Below are positions 3,430-53,389 of a stretch of 64,000 bases of DNA, piece by piece. Numbering within the stretch: position 1 is the stretch's first letter; the number at the start of each line of letters is the position of its first letter. The translations under genes were made by a program, and so were the position numbers. Under the pieces are notes generated by a model, which did no database searches, was not told where the DNA came from, and saw nothing but the letters and a program-made list of their open reading frames with translations. Source of the DNA: Lytechinus pictus. Lineage: Eukaryota. The DNA lies in the NCBI RefSeq assembly GCF_037042905.1, contig NC_087262.1:16740001-16804000 (forward strand). Reading direction: 5' to 3'.

Positions 3430-4059
3430 ATGGCTGAAAAGATTGAAATAGAGAAAGCCTCTAGTTCTTCACAGAACCTGATATGTCCGCTATGTCTTGA
3501 TATTTTTGATGAACCGACGATCCTGATGTGCGGACACACTTTCTGTCGAAAGTGTCTCAAGAAATATGATCTAACCCACCAGGACATTGACCACATGGTC
3601 TGCCCTCTCTGCAGGGAGATCACCAAGTTGTCTGCCAACCGTGTCGACGATCTCCGCCTCAATGTCTCCATTTACGGATTCGTAGACGATTACCACGCCA
3701 AGTGTGGAGGGATGAATTCTGTTCTAGAAATGAACCATAAATGCACAGCTTGCAAGTTTCAAGAAGACGCTGTCTCCTTTTGCAGAACATGTAATAACTA
3801 CATGTGTGATAAATGCATTCAATGTCATCAACGTCTTAGTCTGTTTGAGGGTCACGAGATTGTCTCCGTGGAGGATGTCATCGAAGGGAAGGTCAGCATT
3901 GGTCATCAATGCGAGAAATGCTCCATCCACAAACAAGAGAACAAAGATATGTTTTGTGATGATTGCAAGGTCCGTGTCTGTCACAAGTGCGTACTCGTTG
4001 GCCACAAGGCTCATGGTATCAAGAACCAGTCGGACTTCGAGCAGGAGTTGAGGCGAAAG
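3430..4059 (+). CDS. TRIM copy 1, coding exon 1: RING (C3HC4), B-box1, B-box2
   Basis: CPLC..CGHTFCRKC..CPLC RING; CTAC..CRTC..CDKC..H..H and CSIH..CDDC..CHKC..H..H B-boxes; donor AAG|GTAATG after 210 codons (phase 0). Confidence 0.93.
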
Positions 4060-4810
4060 GTAATGGTCATTTGAGATTTAGGGGTATCAAGTAGAAAACA
4101 ATATCTTAAAGAAGATGCTGATGAAGATTGTGCCGTTGAAGGAGAAGAAGATGATGATACTAGCTATTATTTTATTAATACCCCTGACTTCCTCGTCCTC
4201 CCCCTCAGTAGGGGACGCAGAACCAGTTGGGGTATACTTTTAGGCCTCCGATCTTTTTTTTTCAGTAAATTTGTACAAAAAATAAATGACAATATTATTG
4301 TGAAATGTTACATGCCCTCCCTTTTTGGATCAGCCCCCGCTCTCAAAACAATGCCACGACCCCCGTACCGTGTGAGTAAAAAAAATGAATCCTCATATTT
4401 TAACGAAAATATTATGCCATTTGCATAATCATATATGGCCTGAAAGAATATTTTCTCCCAAATAACTTAATACGTTATTTATGTGGACTGTGTTCACGCT
4501 TGAATGATCAAGATATATTATTTTATTCTTATTTGTATTGATGTAAATTTTGATTTGCGCTAAAGCAAGACATGGCTGCAATAAATTACTCCATATGTCA
4601 GTGATGTCATAATATATACAAGAGTTCCATCAAAATCCATTTCAGAATACGTTATCGATAATGTACATTTATTGTTTAATAACGACTTTTAAGTATTAAT
4701 TATCAAGTTGATTTCATTGAAGGGATTTGCAAATTAATATGTTTACTAATTCATGATGGATTATGACATCATTGGCATACGGATTCATTCATTGCAGTAA
4801 TGCCAAACTT

Positions 4811-5162
4811 TCGCGCAAATCAAGATTTGCATCACTGCAAAGAATACCAACTGATTATCTAAGCGTGAAGACATACAACATAAATATGGAATTAAATTTT
4901 GTTGAAGAAGATACTCTTTCCAAATCGTTCAAGATTTCCCTTAAATTGGGGACTTATGAGGTTTTTATTCACACGGTATACTGCTAATTGTGATATCAAT
5001 GTTAATAATAATAATGAAAAAATTATGATGATAATTATAAATAATAATGATATTGATAACAATAGTAATACTGATACTATTGTTAATTTTGACAAAATCT
5101 ATATTAATTCTAATAATAATAATGACGATAATGATCGTAACTAAAACTATCATTGATACATA
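4811..5162 (+). repeat. 352-bp intronic segment duplicated around the RTE insertion (copies at 6231-6582 and, partially, 7112-7248)
   Basis: tcgcgcaaatcaag...cattgatacata repeats with 1420-bp period; single copy in the introns of genes 3 and 4. Confidence 0.92.
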
Positions 5163-6230
5163 TCTCTCTCTTGGCTTGCTTCGCGAACGAAGATTTATAA
5201 AGGCAGTCCACGTCGACTGCAGGCACGCATGTGACTCACAAGGCCAATACGTGATAGACAGGCCCGGCCACAGCGGCCGCAGTCAAAAGTCACGTTTGGT
5301 GTGGCTGCTGAGGCTTCGCGATTCTTTCTGCGGCGACGTTTCTCCCTCAGGTGATCTTTTCGGGATTCCTCGAAAAAAGAGGCAGCCTGATGGACTATAT
5401 GTCGCCAGCTAGCACGGTCAGCAGCCAGAGTAGACCACTGGCAATGATCGATATGGCATGTACCGAGGGACTTCTTCAGGATGTCCTTGAAGCGTTTCTT
5501 TGGAGCCCCTCTGTCACGATTGCCAGTAGAAAGTTCGCCGTACAGGGCTATCTTGGGCAGGCGATGGTCTTCCATTCTTGAGATGTGTCCTGCCCAACGG
5601 AGCTGAGTCTTCAGCAGCATGGCCTCGATACTGGGGATCTCCGCCTGTTCAAGGACCTCAACATTTGTGACATAGTAGGTCCAGTGAATGTTGAGGATGA
5701 TCCGGAGACAGCGCTGATGGAAACGCTCCAGGAGTCGCATGTGGTGGCGGTAAGTTACCCACGACTCAGAACCGTACAGTAGGGTGGTGAGGACAACAGC
5801 TCTGTATACGCTGATCTTGGTGCCCCTTTTCAGATGCTTATTTCTCCAGACCCGCTTGTACAGTCTGCCGAAGGCACTGTTAGCTTTGGCCAGTCTGTTG
5901 TCTACTTCCCTGTCAATCTTGGCGTCTGAAGTAATTGTACATCCCAGGTAGGTAAACTGGTGAACGCTCTTCAACACAGTCTCGCCAATAGTGATGTGAG
6001 GAAGGCGGTACTCTTCCCGGGGTGCAGGTTGATGGAGGACTTCCGTCTTCTTCAAGCTGACTTCGAGTCCGAAGAGTTGAGCAGCCTCCGCAAAGCAGGA
6101 TGTCAAGCACTGCAGGGCTCTTTCGGTATGGGCAACGAGGGCAGCATCATCGGCAAAGAGAAGGTCTCTAAATATTTGCTCACAAGTTTTTGTGTGGGCC
6201 TGCAGTCTCCTGAGATTGAATAGACTGCCA
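5163..6230 (-). mobile_element. 5'-truncated RTE-clade LINE (RT C-terminal part plus zinc finger), antisense in intron of copy 1
   Basis: Open frame 5195-6238 with LFADD, YLG, LRWAGH, CxxC..H..C; short 3' end with (GA)n tail; absent from paralogous introns. Confidence 0.92.
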
Positions 6231-6582
6231 TCGCGCAAATCAAGATTTGCATCACTGCAAAGAATACCAACTGATTATCTAAGCGTGAAGACATACAACA
6301 TAAATATGGAATTAAATTTTGTTGAAGAAGATACTCTTTCCAAATCGTTCAAGATTTCCCTTAAATTGGGGACTTATGAGGTTTTTATTCACACGGTATA
6401 CTGCTAATTGTGATATCAATGTTAATAATAATAATGAAAAAATTATGATGATAATTATAAATAATAATGATATTGATAACAATAGTAATACTGATACTAT
6501 TGTTAATTTTGACAAAATCTACATTAATTCTAATAATAATAATGACGATAATGATCGTAACTAAAACTATCATTGATACATA

Positions 6583-7111
6583 TCTCTCTCTTGGCTTGCT
6601 TCGCGAACGAAGATTTATAAAGGCAGTCCACGTCGACTGCAGGCACGCATGTGACTCACAAGGCCAATACGTGATAGACAGGCCCGGCCACAGCGGCCGC
6701 AGTCAAAAGTCACGTTTGGTGTGGCTGCTGAGGCTTCGCGATTCTTTCTGCGGCGACGTTTCTCCCTCAGGTGATCTTTTCGGGATTCCTCGAAAAAAGA
6801 GGCAGCCTGATGGACTATATGTCGCCAGCTAGCACGGTCAGCAGCCAGAGTAGACCACTGGCAATGATCGATATGGCATGTACCGAGGGACTTCTTCAGG
6901 ATGTCCTTGAAGCGTTTCTTTGGAGCCCCTCTGTCACGATTGCCAGTAGAAAGTTCGCCGTACAGGGCTATCTTGGGCAGGCGATGGTCTTCCATTCTTG
7001 AGATGTGTCCTGCCCAACGGAGCTGAGTCTTCAGCAGCATGGCCTCGATACTGGGGATCTCCGCCTGTTCAAGGACCTCAACATTTGTGACATAGTAGGT
7101 CCAGTGAATGT
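6583..7111 (-). mobile_element. Second, shorter copy of the same RTE 3' end
   Basis: Appears identical to 5163-5691, with the same 3' junction. Confidence 0.92.
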
Positions 7112-7504: not shown

Positions 7505-8770
7505 GTGACAGACCTTGCCCAGCAATGTGCAGCTAAGAAAGCTGAGCTGGAAAAGAACATTCAGAATATAGAATTACAACGTCATGAGGTACACACTGCC
7601 ATGCAGAAACTACTAGCTGATGTCAGGCAGTCTTACAGCATCAAGGTCAAAGAGCTGGAAGGAAATCTTCAAGATCTCATCGAGCAAATAAATGAATTGA
7701 AGCGAGGTTTCGAGGATGATCTCAACATCTTAAAATCCAAGGATCGACAGAGGATCAAGAGCATTTGTAGTTCGATTACATTGGTAGATAATGACAGACT
7801 GGGTCATCTTGAGAGAGACAGTCTTTCTGCCCATAATTTGCTCTGTGATGAGCTAGGTACTATGCTGAAAGAGGTTACCGATCGCACTACTGCGGAAGTT
7901 ATTACAAAGAAAGCACATGAGAAGAGATTCAATCCTGCAGATGCCTCTTGTCTTGACCTCGGGTGCATCTCTGGATGGGATCCCAAGTTAGAAACCATGA
8001 AGTGTATAGATCTACGGGGACAAATGGTTGGAATGACAGCTTACACTCATACCAGTGTGGCCATCGTATATGGGATTAATACACGAGGTATTGATATCAT
8101 TGATACAGCTGGTGGAACGGAGCGGTATACAAACATACCACATGACATGCATGGTTATGGTGATATTGTGATTCAACGAGACAGTGAATCATGTGTCTCA
8201 ACTGGTACTACAGAAGCACACATGTATTCTCCCAATGGCTCCAGGAAAGCAACAATCAACGTGAGTCGGACTCGTTATTATCTCAAACTGAACAGAAGTC
8301 CATCAAATGAGATCATCATTGCTAACGGTGCCAACAAAGTCTACATCTATGACCCGACTGGATCCACTCTCAAACACACTGTTCCAACAAAGCACAAGAC
8401 ATGGCAGGTATCATCCACCAGGTCTGGTTTGATCATCACCAGTTCTTGTCATCTCACCAATCCAAACGTGGTGACGGTCTATGACAGGGATGGGAATGCT
8501 GGTGAGTCTCTGCAAGCTCCAAAGGATGTCTACCTGTATGCTGCCGTGGATGAGCAGGACAGGGTGTATATAGCGAGTGTTGATAGGAAGAATAGGAAGG
8601 TGGTGATCAGGCTCTATGATCTTGATGGTCTGAACCTGAAGGAAAGAGTTGAGTTTAATGCACTTGACATGACATTGGGTGATAATTGGTGTTACTTGGT
8701 GTCCCTCTCTCCGGACCTACTCGCCTTTGCTTGTATGAAGAAGTTATATTTCATCAAGGTATCGCTGTAA
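7505..8770 (+). CDS. TRIM copy 1, coding exon 2: coiled coil plus NHL-like beta-propeller (spliced product 631 aa)
   Basis: Polypyrimidine tract and ttttAG|GTG acceptor in frame with exon 1; heptad-rich N-terminal half; repeated beta-blade motifs (EIIIANGANKVYIYD, VTVYDRDG, AVDEQDRVYIAS). Confidence 0.9.
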   Translation: MTDLAQQCAAKKAELEKNIQNIELQRHEVHTAMQKLLADVRQSYSIKVKELEGNLQDLIEQINELKRGFEDDLNILKSKDRQRIKSICSSITLVDNDRLGHLERDSLSAHNLLCDELGTMLKEVTDRTTAEVITKKAHEKRFNPADASCLDLGCISGWDPKLETMKCIDLRGQMVGMTAYTHTSVAIVYGINTRGIDIIDTAGGTERYTNIPHDMHGYGDIVIQRDSESCVSTGTTEAHMYSPNGSRKATINVSRTRYYLKLNRSPSNEIIIANGANKVYIYDPTGSTLKHTVPTKHKTWQVSSTRSGLIITSSCHLTNPNVVTVYDRDGNAGESLQAPKDVYLYAAVDEQDRVYIASVDRKNRKVVIRLYDLDGLNLKERVEFNALDMTLGDNWCYLVSLSPDLLAFACMKKLYFIKVSL

Positions 8771-15080: not shown

Positions 15081-17812
15081 CTGGAGATAAATTAGTAAAC
15101 ATCCTCGTCTCTTTTAATTTTGTCAAGTAAATTGCTTTTTGTTGAAATACTGAATAAAAATAATAATAACAATGTATATACATGTAGAGGACTCCTCGCA
15201 CGGAGTAAAACAAAAATCGTACACATGGATTTTGAAGTTACACCTTGTAGGACTATTGATACTAAAAAAAGGGGGTACTTTAAATATTTCGTTGATAGAA
15301 AACAATAACTGTCCCCATACAAATATCACTGATGTCTTCGGTTTGGTGAATAAAGTAATTTGTTCTCTTCGTGAATATTAAGGTTTTTGTCGTTTGGAAA
15401 TGTATACACATGGATTTCTGGCAAGATAGACTATAGTCTTACCACATAGGAAGGGGGATTTTAAGTGAATGAATAAAAAAAGATGTATAGTTTCATAATG
15501 TGATTTCTAAATATGTTTGTTCAACTATTCGCTGCCTGCACTGGCATAATGTTTCTCTCCCGCGAATATTATATTTCTATAATTTATTTTTGTACTTCAA
15601 CTTTTGATATTTATATTGTTTTTTTTGTTGGCGTCATGTTCCATCTCTATCCGTTATTGTAAATTGATTTTTAAAATGCATATATCGAAACAAAGACACA
15701 GGGGTTTGTTTCTCATACAAGCATGGACTTTTTCTTGGCAAACCCTCCGTTCTGTTCCATTTATTTTTTACCCAAAGTCACTTTTATTCACCTCAATATC
15801 CTTTCATTCGATTTTTTTCTTCTTAATTATGTATATTATAATTGGAATTGAACTCGTTGTGATATTTTTTACAATGTATTTTTTATATGAATATACTTAA
15901 GTGCATTTTAAGAACCAATAAGTAATAAATCAATCTCAAATCTCACTAAAATGATCAAATACCTTCTCACAGACGAATTACGTTTTTAGTAAATCCGTGG
16001 ATTTAAAGAAAGAGAGAACGTTGTATCAAATCAGGATGCAATTCGTTTTACCCACTGTTCTCTGAGATGAATTATAATATCAACATTTTGCGCCAATTTA
16101 GTGTCGTTTGTTTTAATTTGGACGTAATGAATGTTATCAATTCAGTTTGACAAATCGGACGGAAATTGTTTGTGTCAACGGAAATGGCTTTACACTGAGA
16201 GTATAGATTATTTTGCACAATCATAATTATTTTACCTGTTTTACATAACATATATCATTTCATGTTTTTAACGATATATATATCGCGTTTATGTAATCTC
16301 TTTATAATACGCTGTCTGATTTCCATCTGTGAAATACACAAAATTATTTCAACCATTGTTATAGCCTATTATGATGTAGCCAATAAAAACTAACGCTGTA
16401 AAGATTCAAATCATAATGATTTCATTATCATGTGTGAGAGGGGAGGAATTTACAGACTTAGTGTTAGCCCTACTCGAGAATGACATAATCAAAATCGACA
16501 ATTAAAATTTCCAAACCAACCGATTACTTTCCATTAATTTTTTTTTCATGGATTTCAATTTTTTAATGATGTAATCAGGGGCGGCACCATGATATTTTGA
16601 TTGGGAGGGGGGGGGGGGTGGCACCGAAAGATTACGTCATATATTTTCTCAATTGAACTATAGGGATGTTTTATATGTATATGGTCCAGACCTCTCCATT
16701 TTAATTCTTTTTCCTCAATTCTCTCATTTCCTTATTTTTCTCCTCCTTTGTCACTACGTACAAAATCGTAGGGAGCGGTAGCCCCTTCCCTTTTCTCTAT
16801 AAATAAATATAGGCAAAATGTTCATACCATTTGTTCCAGGAAAGGTAAGAGAAATGGAGATTGAAAGAAAGAAGGGAGGGGGTAGAAGGGGCAGGGCCGT
16901 AGCTAGAGGGGGGGTATGGGGGGTGTGACACCCCCCAACATTCGTGGCAGTCGGCAAAATCATGTACCAGTTNNNNNNNNNNNNNNNNNNNNNNNNNNNN
17001 NNNNNNNNNNNNNNNNNNNNNNNNNNNNNNNNNNNNNNNNNNNNNNNNNNNNNNNNNNNNNNNNNNNNNNNNNNNNNNNNNNNNNNNNNNNNNNNNNNNN
17101 NNNNNNNNNNNNNNNNNNNNNNNNNNNNNNNNNNNNNNNNNNNNNNNNNNNNNNNNNNNNNNNNNNNNNNNNNNNNNNNNNNNNNNNTTGAAGAAGGTTA
17201 CGACTTTTAGAGTAAAGACAACCAATTGGCAAATCCAAGTCCATGTAGCCAGGCTTAGAGCCCTATACTAGTCAGCAAAATACTAAGTACAAAACAGATG
17301 GAGCAATAATAACACACAAAGTAAGCCCCCGGTCCTCCCCCAATATGAACAAGCTTGTTAGTTTGCAAATTATACCACAATTATTGACGATTTAACAAAC
17401 ACATTAGTTTTGTAAAATTAGAGGCAAGACTAGGTACATAAATATTGGGTGGGGTGAATTTCCAAGGTTTAAGTTGAATAATCAAAGCCAAAGTATAGTT
17501 GGCAAATTATAAAGTGGGCCTATTAAAGTGGCAGAACACTATACGCTCTACCAGTCAGCAAAGTGATGTACAAGTACTGCCCCGTTTCAGATCTGAAAAG
17601 AACAGAACACAAGACTTAAAAAACTGGTAACTCTGCAGTTGGCAAATTCATGAAGACAAGTCTACAACTTGTAGACTTGTCTACAAGTTTGCAGTTGGCA
17701 AAAAACACAAAAATGTTCTAAGTTATTTTTACTAAACTTTTTTATTTATTTATGGTGTCAGAAGGTGCTTAGGGTGGGGATGGGGGCAGGTTGGGCTTGC
17801 ATCATTCCTGGT

Positions 17813-17977: not shown

Positions 17978-18015
<38 letters not shown>

Positions 18016-18050: not shown

Positions 18051-18096
<46 letters not shown>

Positions 18097-26376: not shown

Positions 26377-27006
26377 ATGGCTGAAAAGATTGAAATAGAG
26401 AAAGCCTCCAGTTCTTCACAGAACCTGGTATGTCCGCTATGCCTTGATATTTTTGATGCACCAACGATCCTGACGTGCGGACACACTTTCTGTCGTAAGT
26501 GTCTCAAGAAATATGATCTGACCCACCAGGACATTGACCACATGGTCTGTCCTCTCTGCAGGGAGATCACCAAGTTGTCTTCCAACCGAGTCGACGATCT
26601 CCGCCTCAATGTCTCCATTAACGGATTCGTAGACGATTACCACGCCAAGTGTGGAGGGATGAATGCTGTCCTTGAGATGCGTACAAAATGTACTGGTTGC
26701 AAGTTTCAGCAAGACGCTGTCTCCTTCTGCAGAACATGTAATAACTACATATGTGACAAATGTTTACAATGCCATCACTACATGGAACTTTTTGAAGATC
26801 ACGAGATTGTCTCCATGGAGGATGTCATCGAAGGGAAGGTCAGCATTGGTCATCAATTTGAGAAATGCTCCATCCACAAACAAGAGAACAAAGATATGTT
26901 TTGTGATGATTGTAAGGTCCGTGTCTGTCTCAGGTGCGTGGTCGTTGGTCATAAAGTCCATAACATCAAGAACCAGTCTGACTTCGAGCATGAGTTGAGG
27001 CGAAAG
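26377..27006 (+). CDS. TRIM copy 2, coding exon 1 (RING, B-box1, B-box2)
   Basis: Paralogue of 3430-4059; donor AAG|GTAATG. Confidence 0.93.
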
Positions 27007-32048: not shown

Positions 32049-33317
32049 GTGACAGAACTTGACCAGCAATGTGCAGCTAAGAAAGCAGAACTGGAGAAGA
32101 ACATTCAGAATATAGAAGAACAACGTCATGAGGTACACACTGCCATGCAGAAACTACTTGATGATGTCAAGCAGGCTTACAACATCAAGGTCACGGAGCT
32201 GGAAGGAAATCTTCAAGATCTCATCGAGCAAATAAATGAACTGAAGCGAAGATTCGAGGATGATCTCAACATCCTAAAATCCAAGGATCGACAGAGGATC
32301 AAGAGCATTTGTAGTTCGATTACATTGGTAGATAATGACAGACTGGGTCATCTTGAGACAGATAGTCTGTCTGCTCATAATTTGCTCTGTGGTGAGCTAG
32401 GTACCATGCTGAAAGAGGTTACCGATCGCACTACTGCGGAAGTTATTACAAAGAAAGCACAGGAGAAGAGTTTTAATCCTGGAGATAAATCTTGTCTTGA
32501 CCTCGGGAGCATCTCTGGATCAGATCCCAAGTTAAAAACCATGAAGTGTATAGATCTACGTGGGTGGATGGTTGGAATGACAGCTTACAGTCATACCAGT
32601 GTGGCCATCGTATATGGGAGTCATAATGCACGAGGTATTGATATCATTGATACAGCTGGTGGAACGGAGCGGTATACAAACATACCACATGACGTGGGTT
32701 ATGAAGATATTGGGATTCAACGAGACGGTGCATCATGTGTCTCAACTGTACGTGATACAGAAGCTCACGTGTATTCTCCCGATGGCTCCAGGAAAGCAAC
32801 AATCAACGTGAGTGGGACTGGTTATTATCTCACACTGAACAGAAGTCCATCAAATGAGATCCTCATTGCTAACGCTGCCAACAAAGTCTACATCTATGAC
32901 CCGACTGGATCTACTCTCAAACACACTGTTCCAACAAAGCACAGGACATGGCAGGTATCATCCACCAGGTTGGGTTTGATCGTCACCAGTTCATGTTATT
33001 TCACCAATCCAGGCGTGGTGACAGTCTATGACAGGGATGGGAATGCTGGTGAGTCTCTACAAGCTCCACAGGATGTCTACCTGTATGCTGCCGTGGATGA
33101 GCAGGACAGGGTGTATATAGCGAGTGTTGATAAGAAGAATAGGAAGGTGGTGATCAGGCTCTATGATCTTGATGGTCTGAACCTGAAGGAAAGGATTGAG
33201 TTTAATGCACTTGATATGACATTGGGCTGGGATTGGTGTTACTTGGTTTCCCTCTCTCCGGACCTACTCGCCTTTGCTTCTGGCAAGAAGTTATATTTCA
33301 TTAAGGTATTGCTGTAA
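32049..33317 (+). CDS. TRIM copy 2, coding exon 2 (coiled coil plus NHL-like propeller; product 632 aa)
   Basis: tttacAG|GTG acceptor; paralogue of 7505-8770; the ORF-track start at 31950 is intronic. Confidence 0.9.
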   Translation: MTELDQQCAAKKAELEKNIQNIEEQRHEVHTAMQKLLDDVKQAYNIKVTELEGNLQDLIEQINELKRRFEDDLNILKSKDRQRIKSICSSITLVDNDRLGHLETDSLSAHNLLCGELGTMLKEVTDRTTAEVITKKAQEKSFNPGDKSCLDLGSISGSDPKLKTMKCIDLRGWMVGMTAYSHTSVAIVYGSHNARGIDIIDTAGGTERYTNIPHDVGYEDIGIQRDGASCVSTVRDTEAHVYSPDGSRKATINVSGTGYYLTLNRSPSNEILIANAANKVYIYDPTGSTLKHTVPTKHRTWQVSSTRLGLIVTSSCYFTNPGVVTVYDRDGNAGESLQAPQDVYLYAAVDEQDRVYIASVDKKNRKVVIRLYDLDGLNLKERIEFNALDMTLGWDWCYLVSLSPDLLAFASGKKLYFIKVLL

Positions 33318-40487: not shown

Positions 40488-41117
40488 ATGGCTGAAAAGA
40501 TTGAAATAGAGAAAGCCTCCAGTTCTTCACAGAACCTGGTATGTCCGCTGTGTCTTGATATTTTTGATGAACCAACGATCCTGACGTGCGGACACACTTT
40601 CTGTCGAAAGTGTCTCAAGAAATATGATCTGACCCACCAGGACATTGACCACATGGTCTGTCCTCTCTGTAGGGAGATCACCAAGTTGTCTTCCAACCGA
40701 GTCGACGATCTCCAACTCAATGTCTCCATTAACGGATTCGTAGACGATTACCACGCCAAGTGTGGAGGGATGAATTCTGTTCTTGAAATGAACCATAAAT
40801 GCACAGCTTGCAAGTTTCAGCAAGACGCTGTCTCCTTCTGCAGAACATGTAATAACTACATATGTGATAAATGTTTACAATCTCACCAGTGTATGACAAT
40901 GTTTGAAGATCACGAGATTGTCTCCATGGAGGATGTCATCGAAGGGAAGGTCAGCATTGGTCATCAATTTGAGAAATGCTCCATCCACAAACAAGAGAAC
41001 AAAGATATGTTTTGTGATGATTGTAAGGTCAGTGTCTGTCTCAGGTGCCTGGTCGTTGGTCACAAGGTCCATAACATCAAGAACCAGTCGGACTTCGAGC
41101 AGGAGTTGAGGCGAAAG
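40488..41117 (+). CDS. TRIM copy 3, coding exon 1
   Basis: Paralogue with intact RING and B-boxes; donor AAG|GTAATG. Confidence 0.93.
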
Positions 41118-42444: not shown

Positions 42445-43710
42445 GTGACAGACCTTGCCCAGCAATGTGCAGCTAAGAAAGCAGAACTGGAGAAGAACAT
42501 TCAGAATATAGAATTACAACGTCATGAGGTACACACTGCCATGCAGAAACTACTAGATGATGTCAGCCAGGCTTACAGCATCAAGGTCAAAGAGCTGGAA
42601 GGAAATCTTCAAGATCTCATCGAGCAAATAAATGAACTAAAGCGAAGTTTCGAGGATGATCTCAACATCCTAAAGTCCAAGGAACGACAGAGGATCAAAA
42701 GCATTTGTAGTTCGGTTACATTGGTAGATAATGACAGACTGGGTCATCTTGAGACAGATAGTCTGTCCGCTCATAATTTGCTTTGTAAGGAGCTAGAAGC
42801 TATGCTGAAAGAGGTTACCGATCGCACTACTGCGGAAGTTATTACAAAGAAAGCACAGGAGAAGAGTTTTAATCCTGGAGATAAATCTTGTCTTGACCTC
42901 GGGCGCATTTCAGGATCAGATCCCAAGTTAGAAACCATGAAGTGTATAGATCTACGAGAGCGGATGGTTGGAATGACAGCTTACACTCGTACCAGTGTGG
43001 CCATCGTATATGGGAATAATACACGAGGTATTGATATCATTGATACAGCTGGTGGAACGGAGCAGTATACAAACATACCACATAACGTGCATGGTTATGT
43101 CGGTATTGTGATTCAGCGAGACGGTGTATTATGTGTCTCAACTGGTTCTACAGAAGCACACGTGTATTCTACCAATGGCTCCAGGAAAGCAACAATCAAC
43201 GTGAGTCGGACTCGTTATTATCTCACACTGAACAGAAGTCCTTCAAATGAGATCCTCATTGCTAATAGTGCCAACAAAGTCTACATCTATGACCCGACTG
43301 GATCCACTCTCAAACACACTGTTCCAACAAAGCACGTGACGAGGCAGGCATCATCCACCAGGTCGGGTTTGATCGTCACGAGTTCATGTTTTCTCACCAA
43401 TCCAAGCGTGGTGACGGTCTATGACAGGGATGGGAATGCTGGTGAGTCTCTGCAAGCTCCGGAGGGTGTCTACCTGTATGCTACCGTGGATGAGCGAGAC
43501 AGGGTGTATGTAGCGAGTGTTGATTGGAAGAATAAGAAGGTGGTGATCAGACTATATGATCTTGATGGTCTGAACCTGAGGGAAAGAGTTGAGTTTAATG
43601 CACTTGATATGACATCGGGTTGGTGTTGGTGTTACTTGGTTTCCCTCTCACCGGACCTACTCGCCTTTGCTTGTTACATGACGTTATATTTCATCAAGGT
43701 ATCGCTGTAA
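42445..43710 (+). CDS. TRIM copy 3, coding exon 2 (product 631 aa)
   Basis: ctcttAG|GTG acceptor; 1327-bp intron lacking the large insertions of copies 1 and 2. Confidence 0.9.
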   Translation: MTDLAQQCAAKKAELEKNIQNIELQRHEVHTAMQKLLDDVSQAYSIKVKELEGNLQDLIEQINELKRSFEDDLNILKSKERQRIKSICSSVTLVDNDRLGHLETDSLSAHNLLCKELEAMLKEVTDRTTAEVITKKAQEKSFNPGDKSCLDLGRISGSDPKLETMKCIDLRERMVGMTAYTRTSVAIVYGNNTRGIDIIDTAGGTEQYTNIPHNVHGYVGIVIQRDGVLCVSTGSTEAHVYSTNGSRKATINVSRTRYYLTLNRSPSNEILIANSANKVYIYDPTGSTLKHTVPTKHVTRQASSTRSGLIVTSSCFLTNPSVVTVYDRDGNAGESLQAPEGVYLYATVDERDRVYVASVDWKNKKVVIRLYDLDGLNLRERVEFNALDMTSGWCWCYLVSLSPDLLAFACYMTLYFIKVSL

Positions 43711-46700: not shown

Positions 46701-49700
46701 TGATTTTGTAAAATGCATATATCCAAACTAAGTCACAAGTTTTGTCTCTCATACAAGCATGAGATATTTCTTAACAAGCCCATCCGTTCCATTTCATTTA
46801 TTTTTTTACCAAAAGTCACTTTTATTCACCTCAATATCCTTTCATCCGAGTTTTTTTTTCTATATTATGTACATTATAATTGGAATTGAACTCGTTGTGA
46901 TATTTATGTACAATGTATTTTTGATATGAAAGTACTTTAATGCATTTTAAGAACGAAGAATTAATAAATCTTAAATATGATCAAATACCTTCTCACAAAC
47001 GAATTTCATTTCTAGTAAATCCGTCGATTTAAAGAAAGAGAGAACGGTGTATCAAACCAGGGTGCAATTCGTTTTACCCACTGTTCCCTCATGTTTGAAT
47101 TATAATACCAATATTTTGCGCCAATTTATTGTTGTTTGTTATAATTTGGACTTAATGAATGTTAACAATTCAGTTTGACAAATGGAACGGAAACTGTTTG
47201 CGTCATCAATATTGCCTTCACTCTGAGAGTATAGATAATTTTGCACAAATATAATTATTTTATATGTTTCACATAACATATATAGTATATCATTTCATGT
47301 TTTTAACGACATATCTATCGAGTTTATGTCATCTCTTCATAATACGCTGACTGATTTCCATCTATGAAATACACAGAATTATTTCAACCATTATTATAGC
47401 CTATTATGGTGTAGCCAATAAAAACTAACGCTGTAAATATTCAAATCATAATAGAAGCGAATAATTTCATTATCATGTGAGTGAGGGTAGGAATTGACAG
47501 ACAAAGTGTTGGCCCTACTATAGAATGACATAATAAAATTTGACAATTAAGATTTCTAAACCAACCGATTATTTCCATTGATTATTAATGATAATAATAA
47601 TCAAGGGCGGCGCCATGATATTTTGATGGGGGGGGGGCACCGAAAGATAGAATTTGAGGGATGTTTTATAGGTACATGGTCCAGACCTCTCCATTTTAAT
47701 TCTTTTTCCTCAATTCTTTCCTTTCCTTCCATATTTTTCTCCTCCTTTGTCACTACGTACAAAATCGTATAGGGAGCGGTAGCCCCTACCATTTTCTCGA
47801 TAGATAAATATAGGCAAAATGTTCATACCATTTGTTCCGGGAAGGGTAAGAAAAATGGAGATTGAAAGAAAGAAGGGAGGGGGCAAAAGGGGTAGAGGTT
47901 TGGAACTAAAGGAGGTGCGAAAGAGGGCAATATTTAAAAGGGAATTATAATAATGAATAGAGTAAAGTCAGAGATGGGAAGAGGGAGGTAGAAAAGATGT
48001 GAGGTGGGGATAAAAAGAGAGATAGGGGAAAGGAAACTCATGCCGTTTGAAAGTATATCACATTACAAGACATCAGATAATTTTATTGTTATTCCGGATA
48101 AAATCTATATAATATAAGGCCTAGTTAAGATCACGCAGCAGTATCAACGAAACCGACTCCAAACCGACCGACTGATACAATGTACACCATTCGAAAAAGA
48201 AATGGTCAGACAGCCCTGGGGTCTGATTTTTGTTATGTTGCAGTCTTACGAACAAAACCGACTCCAAATAAACTATTATGCCATTTGAAATTTTAAAAAA
48301 AATCCGTAATAGCCCTGACCGAGTCCAAACCCACTGATACCATTTGAGAAAAAAAAATGGTAGACCTGACCGGTTTGATGTCTATTTCATTTGTGTGAAA
48401 GAATTAGCATAACACAGAAAAAAAAATCAATGCTCCAGTTATACCAACAAAACCGACTCCAAACCGATTGATTTGACATTTGAAAAACAAAAACAAACCG
48501 TTATAGCCCTGATCGGTTTTAGGTCGGTTTCATCGATGTGACTGTAGCGTGACAAAGAAATTACAAAATCAATGTAATGGAAACAGGTCTTGATGGGAGG
48601 TGTTATTATTTTTTTAGGGGGGGGGGGCAAGTCACAAATTTTCAACGAGGGTCTTAGTTCATCCTACAGTGTTGTTTTTTCTTCAGGAGGGAACAGGTGA
48701 TTTTTTGTTGAGAATCCTGAAAGTGATGGATTAAAGTAACTGAGTAATCACTAGTAGTATATAGAGGAACGTTTTGAGTTTGAATGGTAAAAAAAGGATT
48801 AAGTGGATTATTATTTTGGTAAATTTGGATCAGTTTTCCAGGGAAGTGTAAGTTTTCAAAATTTTCCCATCTAAAGGGGACGGGCAATTGCCCATTTCTC
48901 ATATAAAACTGAATTGCAGCCACTGAGGTGGCCCATGTTTGAAAAAATAAGGTCTAATACCTATTTTTGATACAAAATTTTAAAAATGGCCCTGCTTCCC
49001 TAACAATGTAATCCGTATTAAGGTTTTTTTTTATTAGTTTCTTCTTCATGTTCACCTAGCTCTTTCCTATTTTTCCTTCCCTTTTTTAAGGAATGATCAT
49101 CATCGAAAAATAACGGAGAAGGAATTCAAAATTCCTCATACTTCCAATAAAGTAAATCAACAGCTACAGATATCATTTTGTATACAGGCATGTTTATTAT
49201 GAGCCTTTTAAATAAGTTGTTTCGCGAATTATTTTCAAACCGTTTTAATAAGATATTTGAAGTATACATTAAAGAACGCATCTTAAGTAAAAACAAATTG
49301 TCTGATATTATAGGGAGTTACATCATGACCCGGACTGGGATCGATTATCAGTATGGATCATGGAAATTATGTTTAAAAAAACTTTTATAATACGCTGTTT
49401 ACTATATGAACTTCACAGAATTAAGTTGTTTAAAACAGCTTAAACATATTAAACAAGTTAGTGTTTGAAATCTTGAACAAGAGGGGAGAAATCAGAGATA
49501 TGAGAAATTAAAGGAAAAGGTATGGTACTTTGTGTACAAACAAATAGAGAGTTAATCAGCAACTTTGAAGCAAGTATGCCAATTTGAGGATCCCCTGACA
49601 GTAAAACTGCTGCTTTAATTTTTACACAATGATGTTGACTGTATACACTAGTTGTTTAACATTTTAAACAATCATTCTAAATTTATTGATAAATCAATAT

Positions 49701-50161
49701 AGAAAAAATAAACGCTTATGTTGATTAAGATTTTACAAACTTGTTTGAACAATAAGATTCATGGTGTAAACAGCGTTGTACAGTGTTTTTACTGTGTAGA
49801 GATAATACAGTACGTGTATCTCTCAACATTGCTCAATGATCCAAAAATGGATTAGAATTGAACGCCCTCTATCGATAAGGTGACAAATGCTTCCATCAAG
49901 TTCAAAGGTAGCTGGGAAAAACCAGTTCTATTTATCATTATACTATTATGCTATTGTAATATATCGCAGCTTCCTCATTCTTTATTAATGTGCACAAAGT
50001 CATATTGTAATAGAAGTTTCGCGCACACAATCATTTCACGACCGTGACGTGCACAATAATTATTATGTACATATTTACAGCAGTGTTACTCGTAGCTATC
50101 TCTCACAACTAAGTAGTACTCAGTTTCGTTGAAATAGTTTGACTGTAGAGTTTATGTAGCT

Positions 50162-50791
50162 ATGGCTGAAAAGATTGAAATAGAGAAAGCCTCCAGTTCT
50201 TCACAGAACCTGGTATGTCCGCTATGTCTTGATATTTTTTATGAACCAACGATCCTGACGTGCGGACACACTTTCTGTCGAAAGTGTCTCAAGAAATATG
50301 ATCTGACCCACCAGGACATTGACCACATGGTCTGTCCTCTCTGTAGGGAGATCACCAAGTTGTCTTCCAACCGAGTCGACGATCTCCAACTCAATGTCTC
50401 CATTAACGGATTCGTAGACGATTACCACGCCAAGTGTGGAGGGATGAATTCTGTTCTTGAAATGAACCATAAATGCACAGCTTGCAAGTTTCAGCAAGAC
50501 GCTGTCTCCTTCTGCAGAACATGTAATAACTACATATGTGATAAATGTTTACAATCTCACCAGTGTATGACAATGTTTGAAGATCACGAGATTGTCTCCA
50601 TGGAGGATGTCATCGAAGGGAAGGTCAGCATTGGTCATCAATTTGAGAAATGCTCCATCCACAAACAAGAGAACAAAGATATGTTTTGTGATGATTGTAA
50701 GGTCAGTGTCTGTCTCAGGTGCGTGGTCGTTGGTCACAAGGTCCATAACATCAAGAACCAGTCGGACTTCGAGCAGGAGTTGAGGCGAAAG
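50162..50791 (+). CDS. TRIM copy 4, coding exon 1
   Basis: Two amino-acid differences from copy 3 exon 1; donor AAG|GTAATG. Confidence 0.93.
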
Positions 50792-52123
50792 GTAATGGTC
50801 ATTTGAGATTTAGGGGTATCAAGTAGAAAACAATATCTTAAAGAAGATGCTGATGAAGATTGTGCCGCTGAAGGAGAAGAAGATGATGATACTAGCTATT
50901 CTTTTATTAATACCCCTGACTTCCTCGTCCTCCCCCTCAGTATAGAGACGCAGAACCAGTTGGGGTATACTTTTAAGCCTCCGATCTTTTTTTTTCAGTA
51001 AATGTGTACAAAAAATAAATGACAATATTATTGTGAAATGTTACATGCCCCCCCTTCTTGGATCAGCCCCCGCTCTCAAAACAATGCCACGACCCCAGTA
51101 CCGTGTGAGTAAAAAAAAATGACACCTCATATTTTAACGAAAATATTATGCCATTTGCATAATCATATATGGCCTGAAAGAATATTTTCTCCCAAATAAC
51201 TTAATACGTTATTTATGTGGACTGTGTTCACGCTTGAATGATCAAGATATATTATTTTATTCTTATTTGTATTGATGTAAATTTTGATTTGCGCTAAAGC
51301 AAGACATGGCTGCAATAAATTACTCCATATGTCAGTGATGTCATAATATATACAAGAGTTCCATCAAAATCCATTTCAGAATACGTTATCGATAATTTGC
51401 ATTTATTGTTTAATAACGACTTTTAAGTATTAATTCTCAAGTTGATTTCATTGAAGGGATTTGCAAATTAATATGTTTACTAATTCATGATCTGATGATG
51501 GATTATGAATGACATCATTGGCATACGGATTCGTTCATTGCAGTAATGCCAAACTTTCGCGCAAATCAAGATTTGCATCACTGCAAAGAATACCAACTGT
51601 ATCTAAGCGTGAAGACATACCACATAAATATGGAATTAAATTAAATCAAGATTTCCCTTAAAATGGGGACTTATGAGGTGTCAAGTTTTTATTCACACGG
51701 TATATGGCTAATTGTGATATCAATGTTAATAATAACAATGAAAAATTGATGATGATAATTATAAATAATAATGATATTGATAACAATAGTAATACTGATA
51801 CTATTGTTAATTTTGACAAAATCTAAATTAATTCTAATAATAATAATAAAAAACTATCATTAATACATATAATATAGCAGTAATAATACGACTACTCATA
51901 TAATGGTAATAACTGTCACTCATATCATTCGTTGCCTCCCCTACCCCCCCCCCCCCCCCCCCTCCTCATCCAGAATAGAGATTAAAAAATATTGATGTGA
52001 CAACTTCCCGGGTGTATTATGTTAAACTTTATAATGGTTACATTCATTCAAAATTCTTCTAAACATTGTTTACGTGAATGATTATTTTACAGCAAACGGT
52101 TACTATTTTTTTTTCTCTCTTAG

Positions 52124-53389
52124 GTGACAGACCTTGCCCAGCAATGTGCAGCTAAGAAAGCAGAACTGGAGAAGAACATTCAGAATATAGAATTACAACG
52201 TCATGAGGTACACACTGCCATGCAGAAACTACTAGATGATGTCAGCCAGGCTTACAGCATCAAGGTCAAAGAGCTGGAAGGAAATCTTCAAGATCTCATC
52301 GAGCAAATAAATGAACTAAAGCGAAGTTTCGAGGATGATCTCAACATCCTAAAGTCCAAGGAACGACAGAGGATCAAAAGCATTTGTAGTTCGGTTACAT
52401 TGGTAGATAATGACAGACTGGGTCATCTTGAGACAGATAGTCTGTCCGCTCATAATTTGCTTTGTAATGAGCTAGAAGCTATGCTGAAAGAGGTTACCGA
52501 TCGCACTACTGCGGAAGTTATTACAAAGAAAGCACAGGAGAAGAGTTTTAATCCTGGAGATAAATCTTGTCTTGACCTCGGGCGCATTTCAGGATCAGAT
52601 CCCAAGTTAGAAACCATGAAGTGTATAGATCTACGAGAGCGGATGGTTGGAATGACAGCTTACACTCGTACCAGTGTGGCCATCGTATATGGGAATAATG
52701 CACGAGGTATTGATATCATTGATACTGCTGGTGGAACGGAGCAGTATACAAACATACCACATAACGTGCATGGTTATGTCGGTATTGTGATTCAGCGAGA
52801 CGGTGTATTATGTGTCTCAACTGGTTGTACAGAAGCACACATGTATTCTACCAATGGCTCCAGGAAAGCAACAATCGAAGTGAATGTGGCTTGTTTTTAT
52901 ATCACACTGAACAGAAGTCCATCAAATGAGATCATCATTGCTAACGGTGCCAACAAAGTCTACATCTATGACCCGACTGGATCCACTCTCAAACACACTG
53001 TTCCAACAAAGCACAAGACATGGCAGGTATCATCCACCAGGTCTGGTTTGATCATCACCAGTTCTTGTCATCTCACCAATCCAAGCGTGGTGACGGTCTA
53101 TGACAGGGATGGGAATGCTGGTGAGTCTCTGCAAGCTCCAAAGGATGTCAACCTGTATGCTACCGTGGATGAGCAGGACAGGGTGTATGTAGCGAGTGTT
53201 GATTATAAGAATAAGAAGGTGGTGATCAGGCTCTATGATCTTGATGGTCTGAACCTGAAGGAAAGAGTTGAGTTTAATGCACTTGACATGACATTGGGTG
53301 ATAATTGGTGTTACTTGGTGTCCCTCTCTCCGGACCTACTCGCCTTTGCTTGTATGAAGAAGTTATATTTCATCAAGGTATCGCTGTAA
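52124..53389 (+). CDS. TRIM copy 4, coding exon 2 (product 631 aa; chimeric)
   Basis: ctcttAG|GTG acceptor; 5' part like copy 3, 3' part like copy 1. Confidence 0.9.
   Translation: MTDLAQQCAAKKAELEKNIQNIELQRHEVHTAMQKLLDDVSQAYSIKVKELEGNLQDLIEQINELKRSFEDDLNILKSKERQRIKSICSSVTLVDNDRLGHLETDSLSAHNLLCNELEAMLKEVTDRTTAEVITKKAQEKSFNPGDKSCLDLGRISGSDPKLETMKCIDLRERMVGMTAYTRTSVAIVYGNNARGIDIIDTAGGTEQYTNIPHNVHGYVGIVIQRDGVLCVSTGCTEAHMYSTNGSRKATIEVNVACFYITLNRSPSNEIIIANGANKVYIYDPTGSTLKHTVPTKHKTWQVSSTRSGLIITSSCHLTNPSVVTVYDRDGNAGESLQAPKDVNLYATVDEQDRVYVASVDYKNKKVVIRLYDLDGLNLKERVEFNALDMTLGDNWCYLVSLSPDLLAFACMKKLYFIKVSL

What the first reader, a model, noticed from the sequence alone, without database searches (positions are those of the whole stretch)
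3430..53389. Tandem TRIM array with a hypervariable beta-propeller face: candidate diversified intracellular immune receptor/E3 ligase family
Seen: four intact RING-Bbox-Bbox-CC-propeller genes. Propeller differences recur at short sites between conserved strands: LR[GQ/GW/ER/ER]M, YG[I/SH/N/N]N, GY[GD/ED/VG/VG]I, ST[GT/VRD/GS/GC]TE, AN[G/A/S/G]AN, KH[KTW/RTW/VTR/KTW]Q, SSC[HL/YF/FL/HL], SVD[R/K/W/Y]K (codons agg/aag/tgg/tat), G[DN/WD/WC/DN]WC, FA[CMK/SGK/CYM/CMK]. Many changes are multi-nucleotide or radical, and all indels keep frame. Established: NHL propellers bind ligand on their top face, and TRIM5alpha and fish finTRIM arrays diversify their C-terminal B30.2 recognition domain. Inference: this is an analogous invertebrate system, with a variable propeller sensor fused to a conserved ubiquitin-ligase module.
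Basis: partly seen in the sequence, partly recalled or inferred. Interest (0 to 1): 0.82.

Follow-up and report, generated by a model that had tools for sequence, protein, structure and literature searches.

The report
Hypervariable-propeller TRIM ligase array, sea urchin
Four neighbouring sea-urchin genes, part of a far larger array, encode ubiquitin ligases whose propeller-shaped binding domain keeps a constant scaffold but has been pushed by natural selection to differ on one face, which is the signature of a diversified intracellular recognition (probably defence) family not yet described for this kind of domain.

Summary
The window is Lytechinus pictus chromosome CM073243.1, about 16.81-16.88 Mb. 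It holds four intact two-exon genes of 631-632 aa: RING, two B-boxes, coiled coil and a C-terminal domain. Pfam does not recognise that domain. AlphaFold2 models it confidently (pLDDT 93.6) as a six-bladed beta-propeller, closest in 3D to the NHL domains of Thin, Brat, TRIM2 and Lin41.

I added nine neighbouring paralogues, giving 13 coding sequences. All ten positions with five or more residues lie in the twelve D-A/B-C ("top") loops, and the opposite face and the strands are nearly constant.

Partitions were defined by structure, not by variability:
- Top loops: omega 2.3-2.5 (LRT against omega=1, p about 1e-5).
- Rest of the propeller: about 0.7-0.9.
- Coiled coil: 0.3.
- RING/B-box exon: 0.21.

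Tree-free counts, a stricter intron-based neutral rate, and a second array on another chromosome (omega 2.6, p=0.007) all agree.

The copies are mosaics. Copy 4 is copy-3-like at its 5' end and copy-1-like at its 3' end, with the switch inside the propeller.

The N gap is intergenic. Every named relative is a sea urchin.

The immune role is still an inference. Two S. purpuratus relatives appear in a coelomocyte stress data set.

Verdict: a new variant of a known kind.

The parts
3430..4059 (+). W1 exon 1: RING (aa 19-61), B-box 1 (aa 105-142), B-box 2 (aa 164-195), start of the coiled coil
   Evidence: Pfam RING E about 1e-10 and B-box E about 6e-8. Zinc ligands are conserved in 68 relatives. 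Donor GTAATG.
7505..8770 (+). W1 exon 2: coiled coil and linker (7505-7984), six-bladed propeller (7985-8767), stop
   Evidence: The spliced product equals P0001. AF2 pLDDT 93.6. Foldseek top hits are NHL domains. The full-length model has a helix at aa 200-305.
26377..27006 (+). W2 exon 1 (RING, two B-boxes)
   Evidence: Differs at only 3 of 630 nt from the exon 1 of a paralogue about 70 kb away.
32049..33317 (+). W2 exon 2; propeller at 32529-33314
   Evidence: The spliced product equals P0009. Blades 3-6 differ at 1 of 507 nt from a paralogue about 175 kb away, while the rest of the exon differs by 5-8%.
40488..41117 (+). W3 exon 1
42445..43710 (+). W3 exon 2; propeller at 42925-43707
50162..50791 (+). 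W4 exon 1
   Evidence: Differs at 3 of 630 nt from W3.
52124..53389 (+). W4 exon 2; propeller at 52604-53386
   Evidence: 99.5% identical to P0004, which comes from a second L. pictus annotation.
49359..52826 (+). W3-like part of the chimeric unit 4: upstream region, exon 1, intron, coiled coil, blades 1-2
   Evidence: About 265 informative sites agree with W3, with a handful of exceptions. There are 0 differences per 150-bp window from the intron into exon 2.
52877..52901 (+). Patch of 9 substitutions in 25 nt, all amino-acid changing, in the D2-A3 top loop of W4
   Evidence: No donor was found in about 300 kb of fetched loci or among the fetched proteins, apart from the same gene in the other assembly.
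52921..54260 (+). W1-like part of unit 4: blades 3-6 and about 0.9 kb of 3' flank
   Evidence: About 140 informative sites agree with W1. There are 0-5 differences per 150 bp against W1.
16973..17187 (.). Assembly gap in the intergenic spacer between W1 and W2. It is not part of any gene.

Best explanation
WHAT IS SHOWN. The window is a slice of a tandem array of at least 14 genes spanning about 300 kb. The array belongs to a family of hundreds of TRIM (RING, B-box, B-box, coiled-coil) E3 ubiquitin ligases found only in sea urchins.
- The C-terminal domain is a divergent, NHL-like six-bladed beta-propeller.
- The ligase module and the propeller scaffold are conserved.
- The twelve loops that make up one face of the propeller are hypervariable among paralogues. 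They have fixed amino-acid changes about twice as fast as silent changes.
- The copies are mosaics made by unequal crossing-over or gene conversion. The exchanged units are the RING/B-box exon, the coiled coil and groups of blades, so loop sets are recombined into new combinations.

WHAT IS INFERRED.
- The variable face is the ligand-binding face. Each paralogue recognises a different, fast-changing target, most likely a pathogen or other parasitic-element protein or RNA in the cytosol.
- The coiled coil dimerises the protein as in other TRIMs. Binding brings the RING domains to the target or to each other, so the target is ubiquitinated for degradation or a signal is raised.
- In short, it would work like TRIM5alpha or fish finTRIMs, with a propeller in place of the B30.2 domain.
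For: GENES AND MODULE. Intact gene models match annotated proteins. RING, B-box and conserved zinc ligands are present. The full-length model has the usual TRIM helix pattern.

FOLD. Propeller model pLDDT 93.6, pTM 0.90. Best fold matches are the NHL domains of Thin, Brat, TRIM2 and Lin41, TM 0.67-0.74.

PLACEMENT OF VARIATION. Variable sites are confined to the D-A/B-C loops. The same holds family-wide: 24 of the 30 highest-entropy positions are in those loops.

SELECTION, ML omega by partition:
- Top loops 2.3-2.5.
- Bottom loops 0.7-1.0.
- Strands 0.9.
- Coiled coil 0.3.
- Exon 1 0.21 (NG86).
The LRT against omega=1 for the top loops gives 2dlnL=19.2.

ROBUSTNESS.
- Tree-free ratio 2.19, bootstrap 95% interval 1.35-3.9, with a uniform synonymous rate across partitions.
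- Ratio 2.0 when each new amino-acid state counts as one event.
- The top-loop rate still exceeds the intron rate.
- Replicated in a second array, omega 2.56, p=0.007.

EXCHANGE BETWEEN COPIES. Mosaic structure.

TAXONOMIC RANGE. Relatives are restricted to echinoids.

RESIDUES AND EXPRESSION. Variable positions are enriched in W, R, K, G, N and Y. S. purpuratus members LOC115921689 and LOC105446105 are listed in coelomocyte differential-expression tables (with for their identity). The paper reports TRIM45/71-like genes induced in phagocytes.

ANALOGUES. finTRIM (PMC2657112) and fungal HET-D/E WD40 (PMC1805685).
Against: - There is no expression, infection or binding data for these four genes or for L. 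pictus. The only expression link is to UVB stress in another species, not to infection.
- 'Same face' rests on strand order in a predicted model. I could not obtain coordinates to measure exposure.
- One variable pair (aa 437-438) lies in a bottom loop. Strands and bottom loops show omega 0.7-0.95 by ML, so constraint on the rest of the propeller is only moderate.
- Synonymous divergence in the propeller (0.06-0.12) is lower than intron divergence (0.21). Measured against the intron rate, the excess in top loops is smaller (0.77 against 0.58 per site, p about 1e-3).
- The comparisons are among recombining paralogues, and 13 sequences give limited power at single sites.
- The ligand could be RNA, an endogenous protein or a transposon product rather than a pathogen molecule.
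Confidence: 0.6

Rival explanations
1. The family consists of diversified RNA-binding TRIM-NHL-type regulators. The variable face reads RNA motifs, as Brat and Lin41 do. The paralogues repress different RNAs, for example transposon or viral transcripts or sets of endogenous mRNAs. Ubiquitination is secondary.
For: The best fold matches are RNA-binding NHL domains, including Brat bound to RNA. Variable positions are enriched in R, K, W, Y, G and N. The RING is closest to TRIM2/3/32.
Against: Identity to the NHL domains is 12-14%, and the Pfam NHL model fails. I could not compute surface charge. The RING zinc ligands are strictly conserved and exon 1 has omega 0.21, so the ligase is being kept. 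This rival overlaps the main explanation if the RNAs are foreign.
Confidence: 0.2
2. The paralogues are substrate adaptors for endogenous protein turnover and have no defence role. They have divided up, or chase, fast-evolving host proteins, for example in gametes or through intragenomic conflict.
For: Positive selection and tandem expansion also occur in reproductive and conflict-related families (my own knowledge). The induction reported in S. purpuratus is by UVB, a stress and not an infection.
Against: The combination seen here is typical of non-self recognition families. It comprises hundreds of copies, a constant scaffold with extreme variation at about 20 surface-loop sites, and shuffling between copies. 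The family members seen in the expression tables come from coelomocytes.
Confidence: 0.12
3. There is no adaptive diversification. The loops are merely unconstrained and drift, while gene conversion homogenises the scaffold and lowers local dS, which mimics omega above 1.
For: The propeller framework has dS of 0.064-0.08 against 0.21 in the intron. Mosaicism is pervasive.
Against: Synonymous sites inside the same loop codons are the local control, and they give a ratio of 2.0-2.2. The whole loop class, conserved positions included, exceeds even the intron rate. Single sites carry 7-9 different residues among 13 copies, p about 3e-6 to 5e-5. A second array replicates the result. Conversion affects silent and replacement sites of a tract alike.
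Confidence: 0.04
4. The tandem copies are an assembly artefact, that is, haplotypes laid side by side or a wrong scaffold join.
For: Sea urchins are highly heterozygous (my own knowledge). One N gap separates W1 from W2-W4.
Against: W2, W3 and W4 lie on uninterrupted sequence (17188-64000). The units differ by 5-15% and have different intron contents. Further copies continue on both sides in the same record. W4, including its odd patch, is found at 99.5% identity in a protein from a second annotation.
Confidence: 0.03

Closest known systems
TRIM-NHL proteins (TRIM2, TRIM3, TRIM32/Thin, TRIM71/Lin41, Brat)
   Same: [quoted passage not shown] These are the best fold matches. The RING is closest to TRIM2/3/32. 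A weak profile match to TRIM2/3/Brat NHL exists, E about 1e-9.
   Different: Identity is only 12-14%. The Pfam NHL model is not matched, and there is no filamin domain. Canonical TRIM-NHL genes are few, conserved and developmental, and are not known as hypervariable arrays (my own knowledge; nothing found). Here there are hundreds of copies with a positively selected face.
Fish finTRIMs and primate TRIM5alpha
   Same: These are TRIM ligases multiplied in arrays, with positive selection concentrated in the loops of the C-terminal recognition domain and with recombination between copies (PMC2657112). This is the same logic as proposed here.
   Different: Their recognition domain is B30.2/PRY-SPRY, a beta-sandwich. 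Here it is a propeller, and no SPRY is detected. finTRIMs were found as virus-induced transcripts; no such evidence exists here.
Fungal HET-D/HET-E (HNWD) NACHT-WD40 non-self recognition genes
   Same: A beta-propeller whose interaction-face positions are under positive diversifying selection while the rest of the repeat is homogenised by exchange between family members (PMC1805685). The low framework dS and the mosaic copies here look alike.
   Different: Those are NLR-type proteins (NACHT plus WD40, 7-8 blades) in which near-identical repeats are exchanged within a gene. Here the blades of one gene are not similar to each other, the effector is a RING ligase, and exchange is between genes.
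Expanded innate-immune gene families of sea urchins (TLR, NLR, SRCR, Sp185/333)
   Same: Large lineage-specific tandem families in the same animals (my own knowledge of the S. purpuratus genome papers). A 2026 paper counts 140 genes annotated as TRIM in S. purpuratus and reports TRIM45/71-like genes induced in coelomocytes (PMC13043383).
   Different: That paper treats them by their automatic names. It describes neither the propeller, nor its variable face, nor selection. In the library searched I found no paper that does.

Membership tests
TRIM / RBCC E3 ligases | N-terminal C3HC4 RING with all eight zinc ligands | tested here: met
   Pfam zf-RING_UBOX and zf-C3HC4, E 1e-8 to 1e-10, in all four genes. 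C19, C22, C34, H36, C39, C42, C58 and C61 are at least 90% conserved in 68 relatives.
TRIM / RBCC E3 ligases | One or two B-box zinc fingers after the RING | tested here: met
   PF00643 matches in two stretches per protein, and PF22586 matches on B-box 1. The ligands of both boxes are conserved.
TRIM / RBCC E3 ligases | Long coiled coil after the B-boxes | tested here: met
   The AF2 full-length model has a helix at aa 200-305 followed by helices at 314-332 and 338-349, pLDDT 80-93. This is a prediction only; dimerisation was not tested.
TRIM / RBCC E3 ligases | Ubiquitin-ligase activity | not testable with these tools
   Needs an in vitro autoubiquitination assay.
TRIM-NHL (class VII / subfamily C) | C-terminal six-bladed beta-propeller of NHL type (fold) | tested here: met
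   24 strands in six blades, closed by the N-terminal strand. The top Foldseek hits are NHL domains, TM 0.67-0.74.
TRIM-NHL (class VII / subfamily C) | NHL repeat sequence signature (Pfam PF01436) | tested here: not met
   No NHL hit at E up to 1 in any of the four exon-2 products. Single-sequence phmmer against PDB finds nothing.
TRIM-NHL (class VII / subfamily C) | Detectable sequence homology of the propeller to NHL domains | tested here: inconclusive
   The family profile hits TRIM2/3/Brat/Thin NHL at E 1e-9 to 2e-8. It scores a repetitive WD40 protein much higher, at 3e-46 over 9 stretches.
TRIM-NHL (class VII / subfamily C) | Filamin/Ig domain between coiled coil and propeller (TRIM2/3/45/71; absent in TRIM32) | tested here: not met
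   There is no filamin hit. Only a short linker lies between the helices and the propeller.
TRIM-NHL (class VII / subfamily C) | Ligand (RNA or protein) bound on the top face | not testable with these tools
   Inferred only from where the variation lies.
Diversified antiviral TRIMs (TRIM5alpha, finTRIM type) | B30.2 / PRY-SPRY recognition domain | tested here: not met
   No SPRY or PRY hit. The fold is a propeller.
Diversified antiviral TRIMs (TRIM5alpha, finTRIM type) | Lineage-specific multigene arrays | tested here: met
   At least 14 genes lie between 16.64 and 16.95 Mb on one strand. A second array lies on CM073239.1. At least 248 protein clusters were found. All named relatives are echinoids.
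Diversified antiviral TRIMs (TRIM5alpha, finTRIM type) | Positive selection concentrated in loops of the recognition domain | tested here: met
Diversified antiviral TRIMs (TRIM5alpha, finTRIM type) | Induction by infection, or antiviral activity | not tested
   The only evidence is UVB-stress data for S. purpuratus relatives.
Fungal HNWD (NACHT-WD40) recognition genes | NACHT NTPase with a hypervariable WD40 propeller | tested here: not met
   There is no NACHT; the N-terminus is RBCC. The resemblance is in mode of evolution only.

The most novel reading that the evidence does not exclude
The family is a germline diversity-generating system for cytosolic receptors. Hundreds of paralogues with a nucleotide-identical scaffold would act as a cassette library. 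Short-tract conversion, or a loop-targeted mutational process, would rewrite only the top-loop codons, and blade groups would be swapped between genes, giving combinatorial specificities. This would be an animal, E3-ligase counterpart of the fungal HET-D/E repeats.

Two observations hint at it. W4 has a patch of 9 substitutions in 25 nt, all replacements. Codon 571 changes at all three bases. Both sit inside tracts that are otherwise about 99-100% identical to a sister copy.
Probability: 0.2. Interest if true: 0.85.

Novelty: new variant of a known kind. Interest (0 to 1): 0.72.

Why it matters
Diversified TRIM ligases are a textbook arm of vertebrate intrinsic immunity, but always with a B30.2 sensor. 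NHL-type propellers are known from a few conserved developmental regulators. If this family is what it looks like, two things follow.
- Sea urchins independently built a very large cytosolic recognition repertoire by making one face of a propeller hypervariable on a ligase chassis. That would add a fourth big family to the TLR/NLR/SRCR expansions for which these animals are known.
- It would show that the 'variable sensor fused to a constant TRIM module' solution is not tied to one sensor fold.

It is directly testable. L. pictus is a genetically tractable urchin. The roughly 20 selected positions are defined. Natural chimeras such as W4 already provide loop-swap controls.

Tried and rejected
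- Pfam on the C-terminal domain gave nothing, and single-sequence PDB search gave nothing. Only the family profile and the fold search identified the domain.
- Model coordinates cannot be reached from scripts. I therefore could not compute solvent exposure or a 3D clustering statistic, and used strand topology instead.
- Look-ups of P0004 and P0017 found no contig, so their DNA could not be added.
- A single tree for exon 2 is star-like with low support, because of recombination. I therefore did not rely on tree-based per-site reconstruction and used tree-free minimal counts.
- I considered local hypermutation of the loops. Synonymous rates are the same in the loops (0.35) and elsewhere (0.29-0.37), so there is no sign of it at silent sites.
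- I searched for a donor of the W4 patch in the window, in 10 loci and in about 260 proteins, and found none.
- I looked for upstream regulatory motifs. AGTTTCGTTGAAAT lies before each ATG. The whole upstream region is conserved by recent duplication, so I draw no conclusion from it.
- Eight literature searches found no description of this family beyond a gene count; one search was used to find the fungal WD40 analogue. The library is partial, so this is not proof of absence.
- The pairwise omega of 1.71 for W1-W4 rests on 6 silent differences in a chimeric comparison. I do not use it as evidence.

Full report
WHERE THE WINDOW COMES FROM AND WHAT IT HOLDS

The exon-2 product of the first gene is 100% identical to a Lytechinus pictus protein annotated 'TRIM71-like'. 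A locus fetched for a neighbouring protein overlaps the window. That places the window on chromosome CM073243.1 of assembly GCA_037042905.1, at about 16,814,024-16,878,023.

ORF listing and splice-site inspection give four genes on the + strand, W1 to W4. Each has two coding exons joined by a phase-0 intron with donor GTAATG and acceptor AG, and each gives 631, 632, 631 and 631 aa without stops. W1 and W2 are identical to the annotated proteins P0001 and P0009. The same extraction rule reproduced seven further annotated proteins in neighbouring loci, so the gene models are sound.

THE ASSEMBLY GAP (TESTED FIRST, AS ASKED)

The Ns at 16973-17187 lie in the spacer, 8.2 kb after W1's stop and 9.2 kb before W2's start. 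No TRIM-like coding fragment lies near them. The only 'ORF' across the gap is an artefact of the unread letters.

The sequence just left of the gap is one copy of a 145-bp unit. In unit 4 that unit forms a 14-copy satellite at the equivalent spacer position (57427-59460). The flanks on both sides are collinear with the other units. Frame continuity is therefore irrelevant to the finding.

What does depend on the join is only the W1-W2 distance and whether further copies hide there. W2-W4 sit on uninterrupted sequence.

THE TANDEM UNIT AND THE LARGER ARRAY

A self-comparison shows a unit of about 10 kb repeated four times. The head of a fifth unit starts at about 62.8 kb and the tail of a preceding unit lies at the window start.

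Fetching seven flanking loci showed that the array runs at least from 16.64 to 16.95 Mb, all on one strand. It has 13 complete exon 2 sequences, one more cut by a locus end, and four exon-1 fragments. All 13 are intact and share the same splice sites. Some have a 33-aa duplication in the linker.

The family is very large. At least 248 protein clusters (at 90% identity) were found in L. pictus, L. variegatus and S. purpuratus. In a library of 1.8 billion representatives it forms only 98 clusters at 50% identity. Every one of the 20 more distant clusters I looked up that carries a name is from a sea urchin: Lytechinus, Strongylocentrotus or Diadema.

THE DOMAINS

Exon 1 encodes a C3HC4 RING and two B-boxes. 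All zinc ligands are conserved across 68 relatives. The closest solved sequences are TRIM28 for the B-boxes and TRIM2/TRIM3/TRIM32 for the RING.

A full-length AlphaFold2 model (pLDDT 83.6) shows a 106-residue helix followed by two shorter ones, which is the usual TRIM coiled-coil region.

The last roughly 270 residues match no Pfam family, neither NHL, WD40 nor SPRY, and no PDB sequence. With an alignment of 76 relatives, AlphaFold2 gives a confident all-beta model (pLDDT 93.6, pTM 0.90) with 24 strands. Foldseek ranks the NHL domains of Drosophila Thin, Brat, human TRIM2 and zebrafish Lin41 first, at TM 0.67-0.74 and 12-14% identity.

The family profile also reaches TRIM2/3/Brat NHL at E about 1e-9, but scores a highly repetitive WD40 protein higher.

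So 'propeller' is confirmed, and 'NHL' holds at the level of fold and architecture but not of sequence signature.

WHERE THE VARIATION LIES

From the strand order I assigned six four-stranded blades. The N-terminal strand closes blade 6. In any propeller the D-to-A and B-to-C connections lie on one face (by convention the top) and the A-to-B and C-to-D connections on the other. This partition was made from the model, not from variability.

The other two top loops (aa 463-470 and 548-551) vary as well.

Among the 13 array paralogues:

| Residues at a site | Top loops | Rest of propeller | p |
|---|---|---|---|
| 4 or more | 18/74 | 4/186 | 8e-8 |
| 5 or more | 10/74 | 0/186 | 2e-6 |

The only clear exception is aa 437-438, in a bottom loop. 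Across the 76-sequence family alignment, mean entropy is 2.30 bits in top loops against about 1.4 elsewhere, and 24 of the 30 most variable positions are top-loop positions. Variable positions are enriched in W, R, K, G, N and Y.

SELECTION

For the four window genes alone, pairwise dN/dS is 0.21-0.27 in exon 1, 0.25-0.41 in the coiled coil and 0.74-1.07 over the whole propeller. That is suggestive but not decisive.

With 13 coding sequences and the structural partitions:

| Partition | ML omega (GY+F3X4) | Pooled NG86 dN | dS |
|---|---|---|---|
| Top loops | 2.3-2.5 | 0.204 | 0.118 |
| Bottom loops | 0.68-0.96 | | |
| Strands | 0.93-0.95 | | |
| Non-top propeller (combined) | 0.70-0.87 | 0.044 | 0.069 |
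| Coiled coil / linker | 0.30-0.33 | 0.033 | 0.115 |
| Exon 1 | | 0.038 | 0.180 |

Fixing omega=1 in the top loops costs 2dlnL=19.2, p about 1e-5.

Because the copies recombine, I also used a tree-free lower bound: a minimum spanning tree over the codon states at each site.
- Replacement changes are 0.77 per site against 0.35 silent in the top loops, a ratio of 2.19 with bootstrap interval 1.35-3.9. Elsewhere the ratio is 0.38-0.58.
- The silent rate is uniform at 0.29-0.37 across partitions, so there is no sign of locally raised mutation at silent sites.
- Counting each new amino-acid state once, so that multi-nucleotide changes cannot inflate the count, still gives 2.0 (p=0.0025).
- Against the harsher neutral yardstick of intron and 3' flank (0.58-0.59 changes per site), the whole top-loop class is still faster (p about 1e-3).
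- Five sites pass Bonferroni correction against the silent rate: aa 429, 445, 571, 604 and 621. The next seven are also top-loop sites.

As an independent replicate I fetched a second array on chromosome CM073239.1, which yielded five propellers. Top loops give omega 2.56 (LRT p=0.007) and the rest 0.70.

MOSAIC COPIES

Sliding comparison of the four units shows sharp switches in relatedness. Informative-site analysis makes W4 a chimera:
- 49359-52826: W3-like, about 265 sites. This covers the upstream region, exon 1, the intron, the coiled coil and blades 1-2.
- 52877-52901: a patch private to W4 with 9 substitutions, all replacements, in the D2-A3 loop.
- 52921-54260: W1-like, about 140 sites. 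This covers blades 3-6 and the 3' flank.

Nearest-neighbour analysis by segment shows the same for the other genes. W2's exon 1 differs at 3 of 630 nt from a gene about 70 kb away. Its blades 3-6 differ at 1 of 507 nt from a gene about 175 kb away. Its coiled coil has no close relative.

In the recently exchanged tracts the few differences are almost all replacements. W1 against W4 gives 6 of 6, including AGG to TAT at aa 571.

The propeller framework has a lower silent divergence (0.064-0.08) than the intron (0.21) or exon 1 (0.18). This fits homogenisation of the scaffold by exchange while the loops are kept different.

HOW IT MOST LIKELY WORKS

Shown:
- A conserved ligase chassis.
- A conserved propeller scaffold.
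- One face diversified by positive selection.
- Modules and blade groups shuffled among many tandem copies.
- A family restricted to echinoids.

Inferred, in three steps:
1. The variable face binds the ligand. This is by analogy with NHL and WD40 propellers, whose top face binds RNA or protein; the Brat-RNA complex is among the fold hits.
2. The different paralogues bind different, fast-changing targets.
3. Binding leads to RING-dependent ubiquitination of the target or to signalling, as in TRIM5alpha and as proposed for finTRIMs.

There is no signal peptide or membrane segment in the sequence (read directly from the N-terminus), so the proteins should be cytosolic or nuclear.

Support for an immune setting is indirect. 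A 2026 study reports TRIM45/71-like genes among the most induced genes in UVB-stressed S. purpuratus coelomocytes and counts 140 genes annotated as TRIM. Two members of this very family, LOC115921689 and LOC105446105, identified through, are in its differential-expression tables.

COMPARISON WITH WHAT IS KNOWN, AND NOVELTY

By architecture and fold the genes belong with the TRIM-NHL group. They fail its sequence signature and lack the filamin domain. Their evolutionary behaviour is that of finTRIM/TRIM5alpha, which use B30.2, and of the fungal HET-D/E WD40 propellers, in which interaction-face residues are selected and repeats are homogenised and exchanged.

Literature searches of the held library found no description of a hypervariable or positively selected propeller in animal TRIMs, nor of this echinoid family beyond a gene count. 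The library is partial.

I therefore rate it a new variant of a known kind.

CAVEATS
- The face was assigned from topology in a predicted model.
- The paralogue comparisons involve recombination and only 13 plus 5 sequences.
- ML omega for strands and bottom loops is only moderately below 1.
- There are no expression or functional data for these four genes.
- The clustered multi-nucleotide changes are unexplained. Either short-tract conversion from unsampled paralogues or an untemplated process could produce them.

Noticed in passing
window 52877-52901 (W4) and the codon for aa 571 of W4, at about 53204-53206: Clustered multi-nucleotide replacement changes sit inside tracts otherwise about 99-100% identical to a sister copy: 9 changes in 25 nt, and AGG to TAT. 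No donor was found in the sequence I could fetch. They could be short conversion tracts that are visible only at loop codons, or an untemplated clustered process.
   Followed up: partly
window 7985-8767, 32529-33314, 42925-43707, 52604-53386 (propeller scaffolds): Silent divergence of the propeller framework (0.064-0.08) is 2.5-3 times lower than that of the adjacent intron and flank (about 0.21) and of exon 1 (0.18). This suggests homogenisation of the scaffold by conversion, or constraint on silent sites.
   Followed up: partly
window 57427-59460; single units near 16800-16972, 37380-37917 and 47774-48321: A 145-bp satellite of 14 copies at 98% identity lies in the spacer after W4. The same unit occurs once at the equivalent place in other spacers. 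The N gap starts right after one such copy, so the gap probably marks an unresolved repeat.
   Followed up: partly
window 4811-7181, inside the W1 intron: A reverse-transcriptase fragment lies on the minus strand (5195-6238 and 6615-7181). It carries an 891-bp direct duplication (4811-5701 and 6231-7121) at 99.7% identity. This explains why the W1 intron is 3.4 kb rather than 1.3 kb.
   Followed up: partly
window 10768-13900, minus strand: Broken open reading frames of a non-LTR retrotransposon (RVT_1, zf-RVT) lie in the spacer between W1 and W2. They account for part of the longer W1-W2 distance.
   Followed up: partly
window 31396-31609 (W2 intron): A G-rich tandem repeat with a period of 15/31/46 bp lies about 440 bp upstream of W2 exon 2.
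   Followed up: no
window 3389-3402, 26337-26350, 40448-40461, 50122-50135: AGTTTCGTTGAAAT, which contains a TTCNNNGAA palindrome, lies 28-41 nt upstream of each start codon. The whole upstream region is conserved by recent duplication, so this alone says nothing about regulation.
   Followed up: partly
loci L002, L004, L006, L007 (same chromosome, outside the window): Some array members are 'long' forms (662-665 aa) with a 33-aa duplication of the linker just before the propeller. The array also contains four isolated exon-1 fragments, which look like pseudogene debris.
   Followed up: no
loci L008-L010 (chromosome CM073239.1, 20.92-21.15 Mb): A second tandem array of the same family lies on another chromosome, about 70-73% identical to the window genes. 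It has the same loop-restricted variation and omega above 1.
   Followed up: yes
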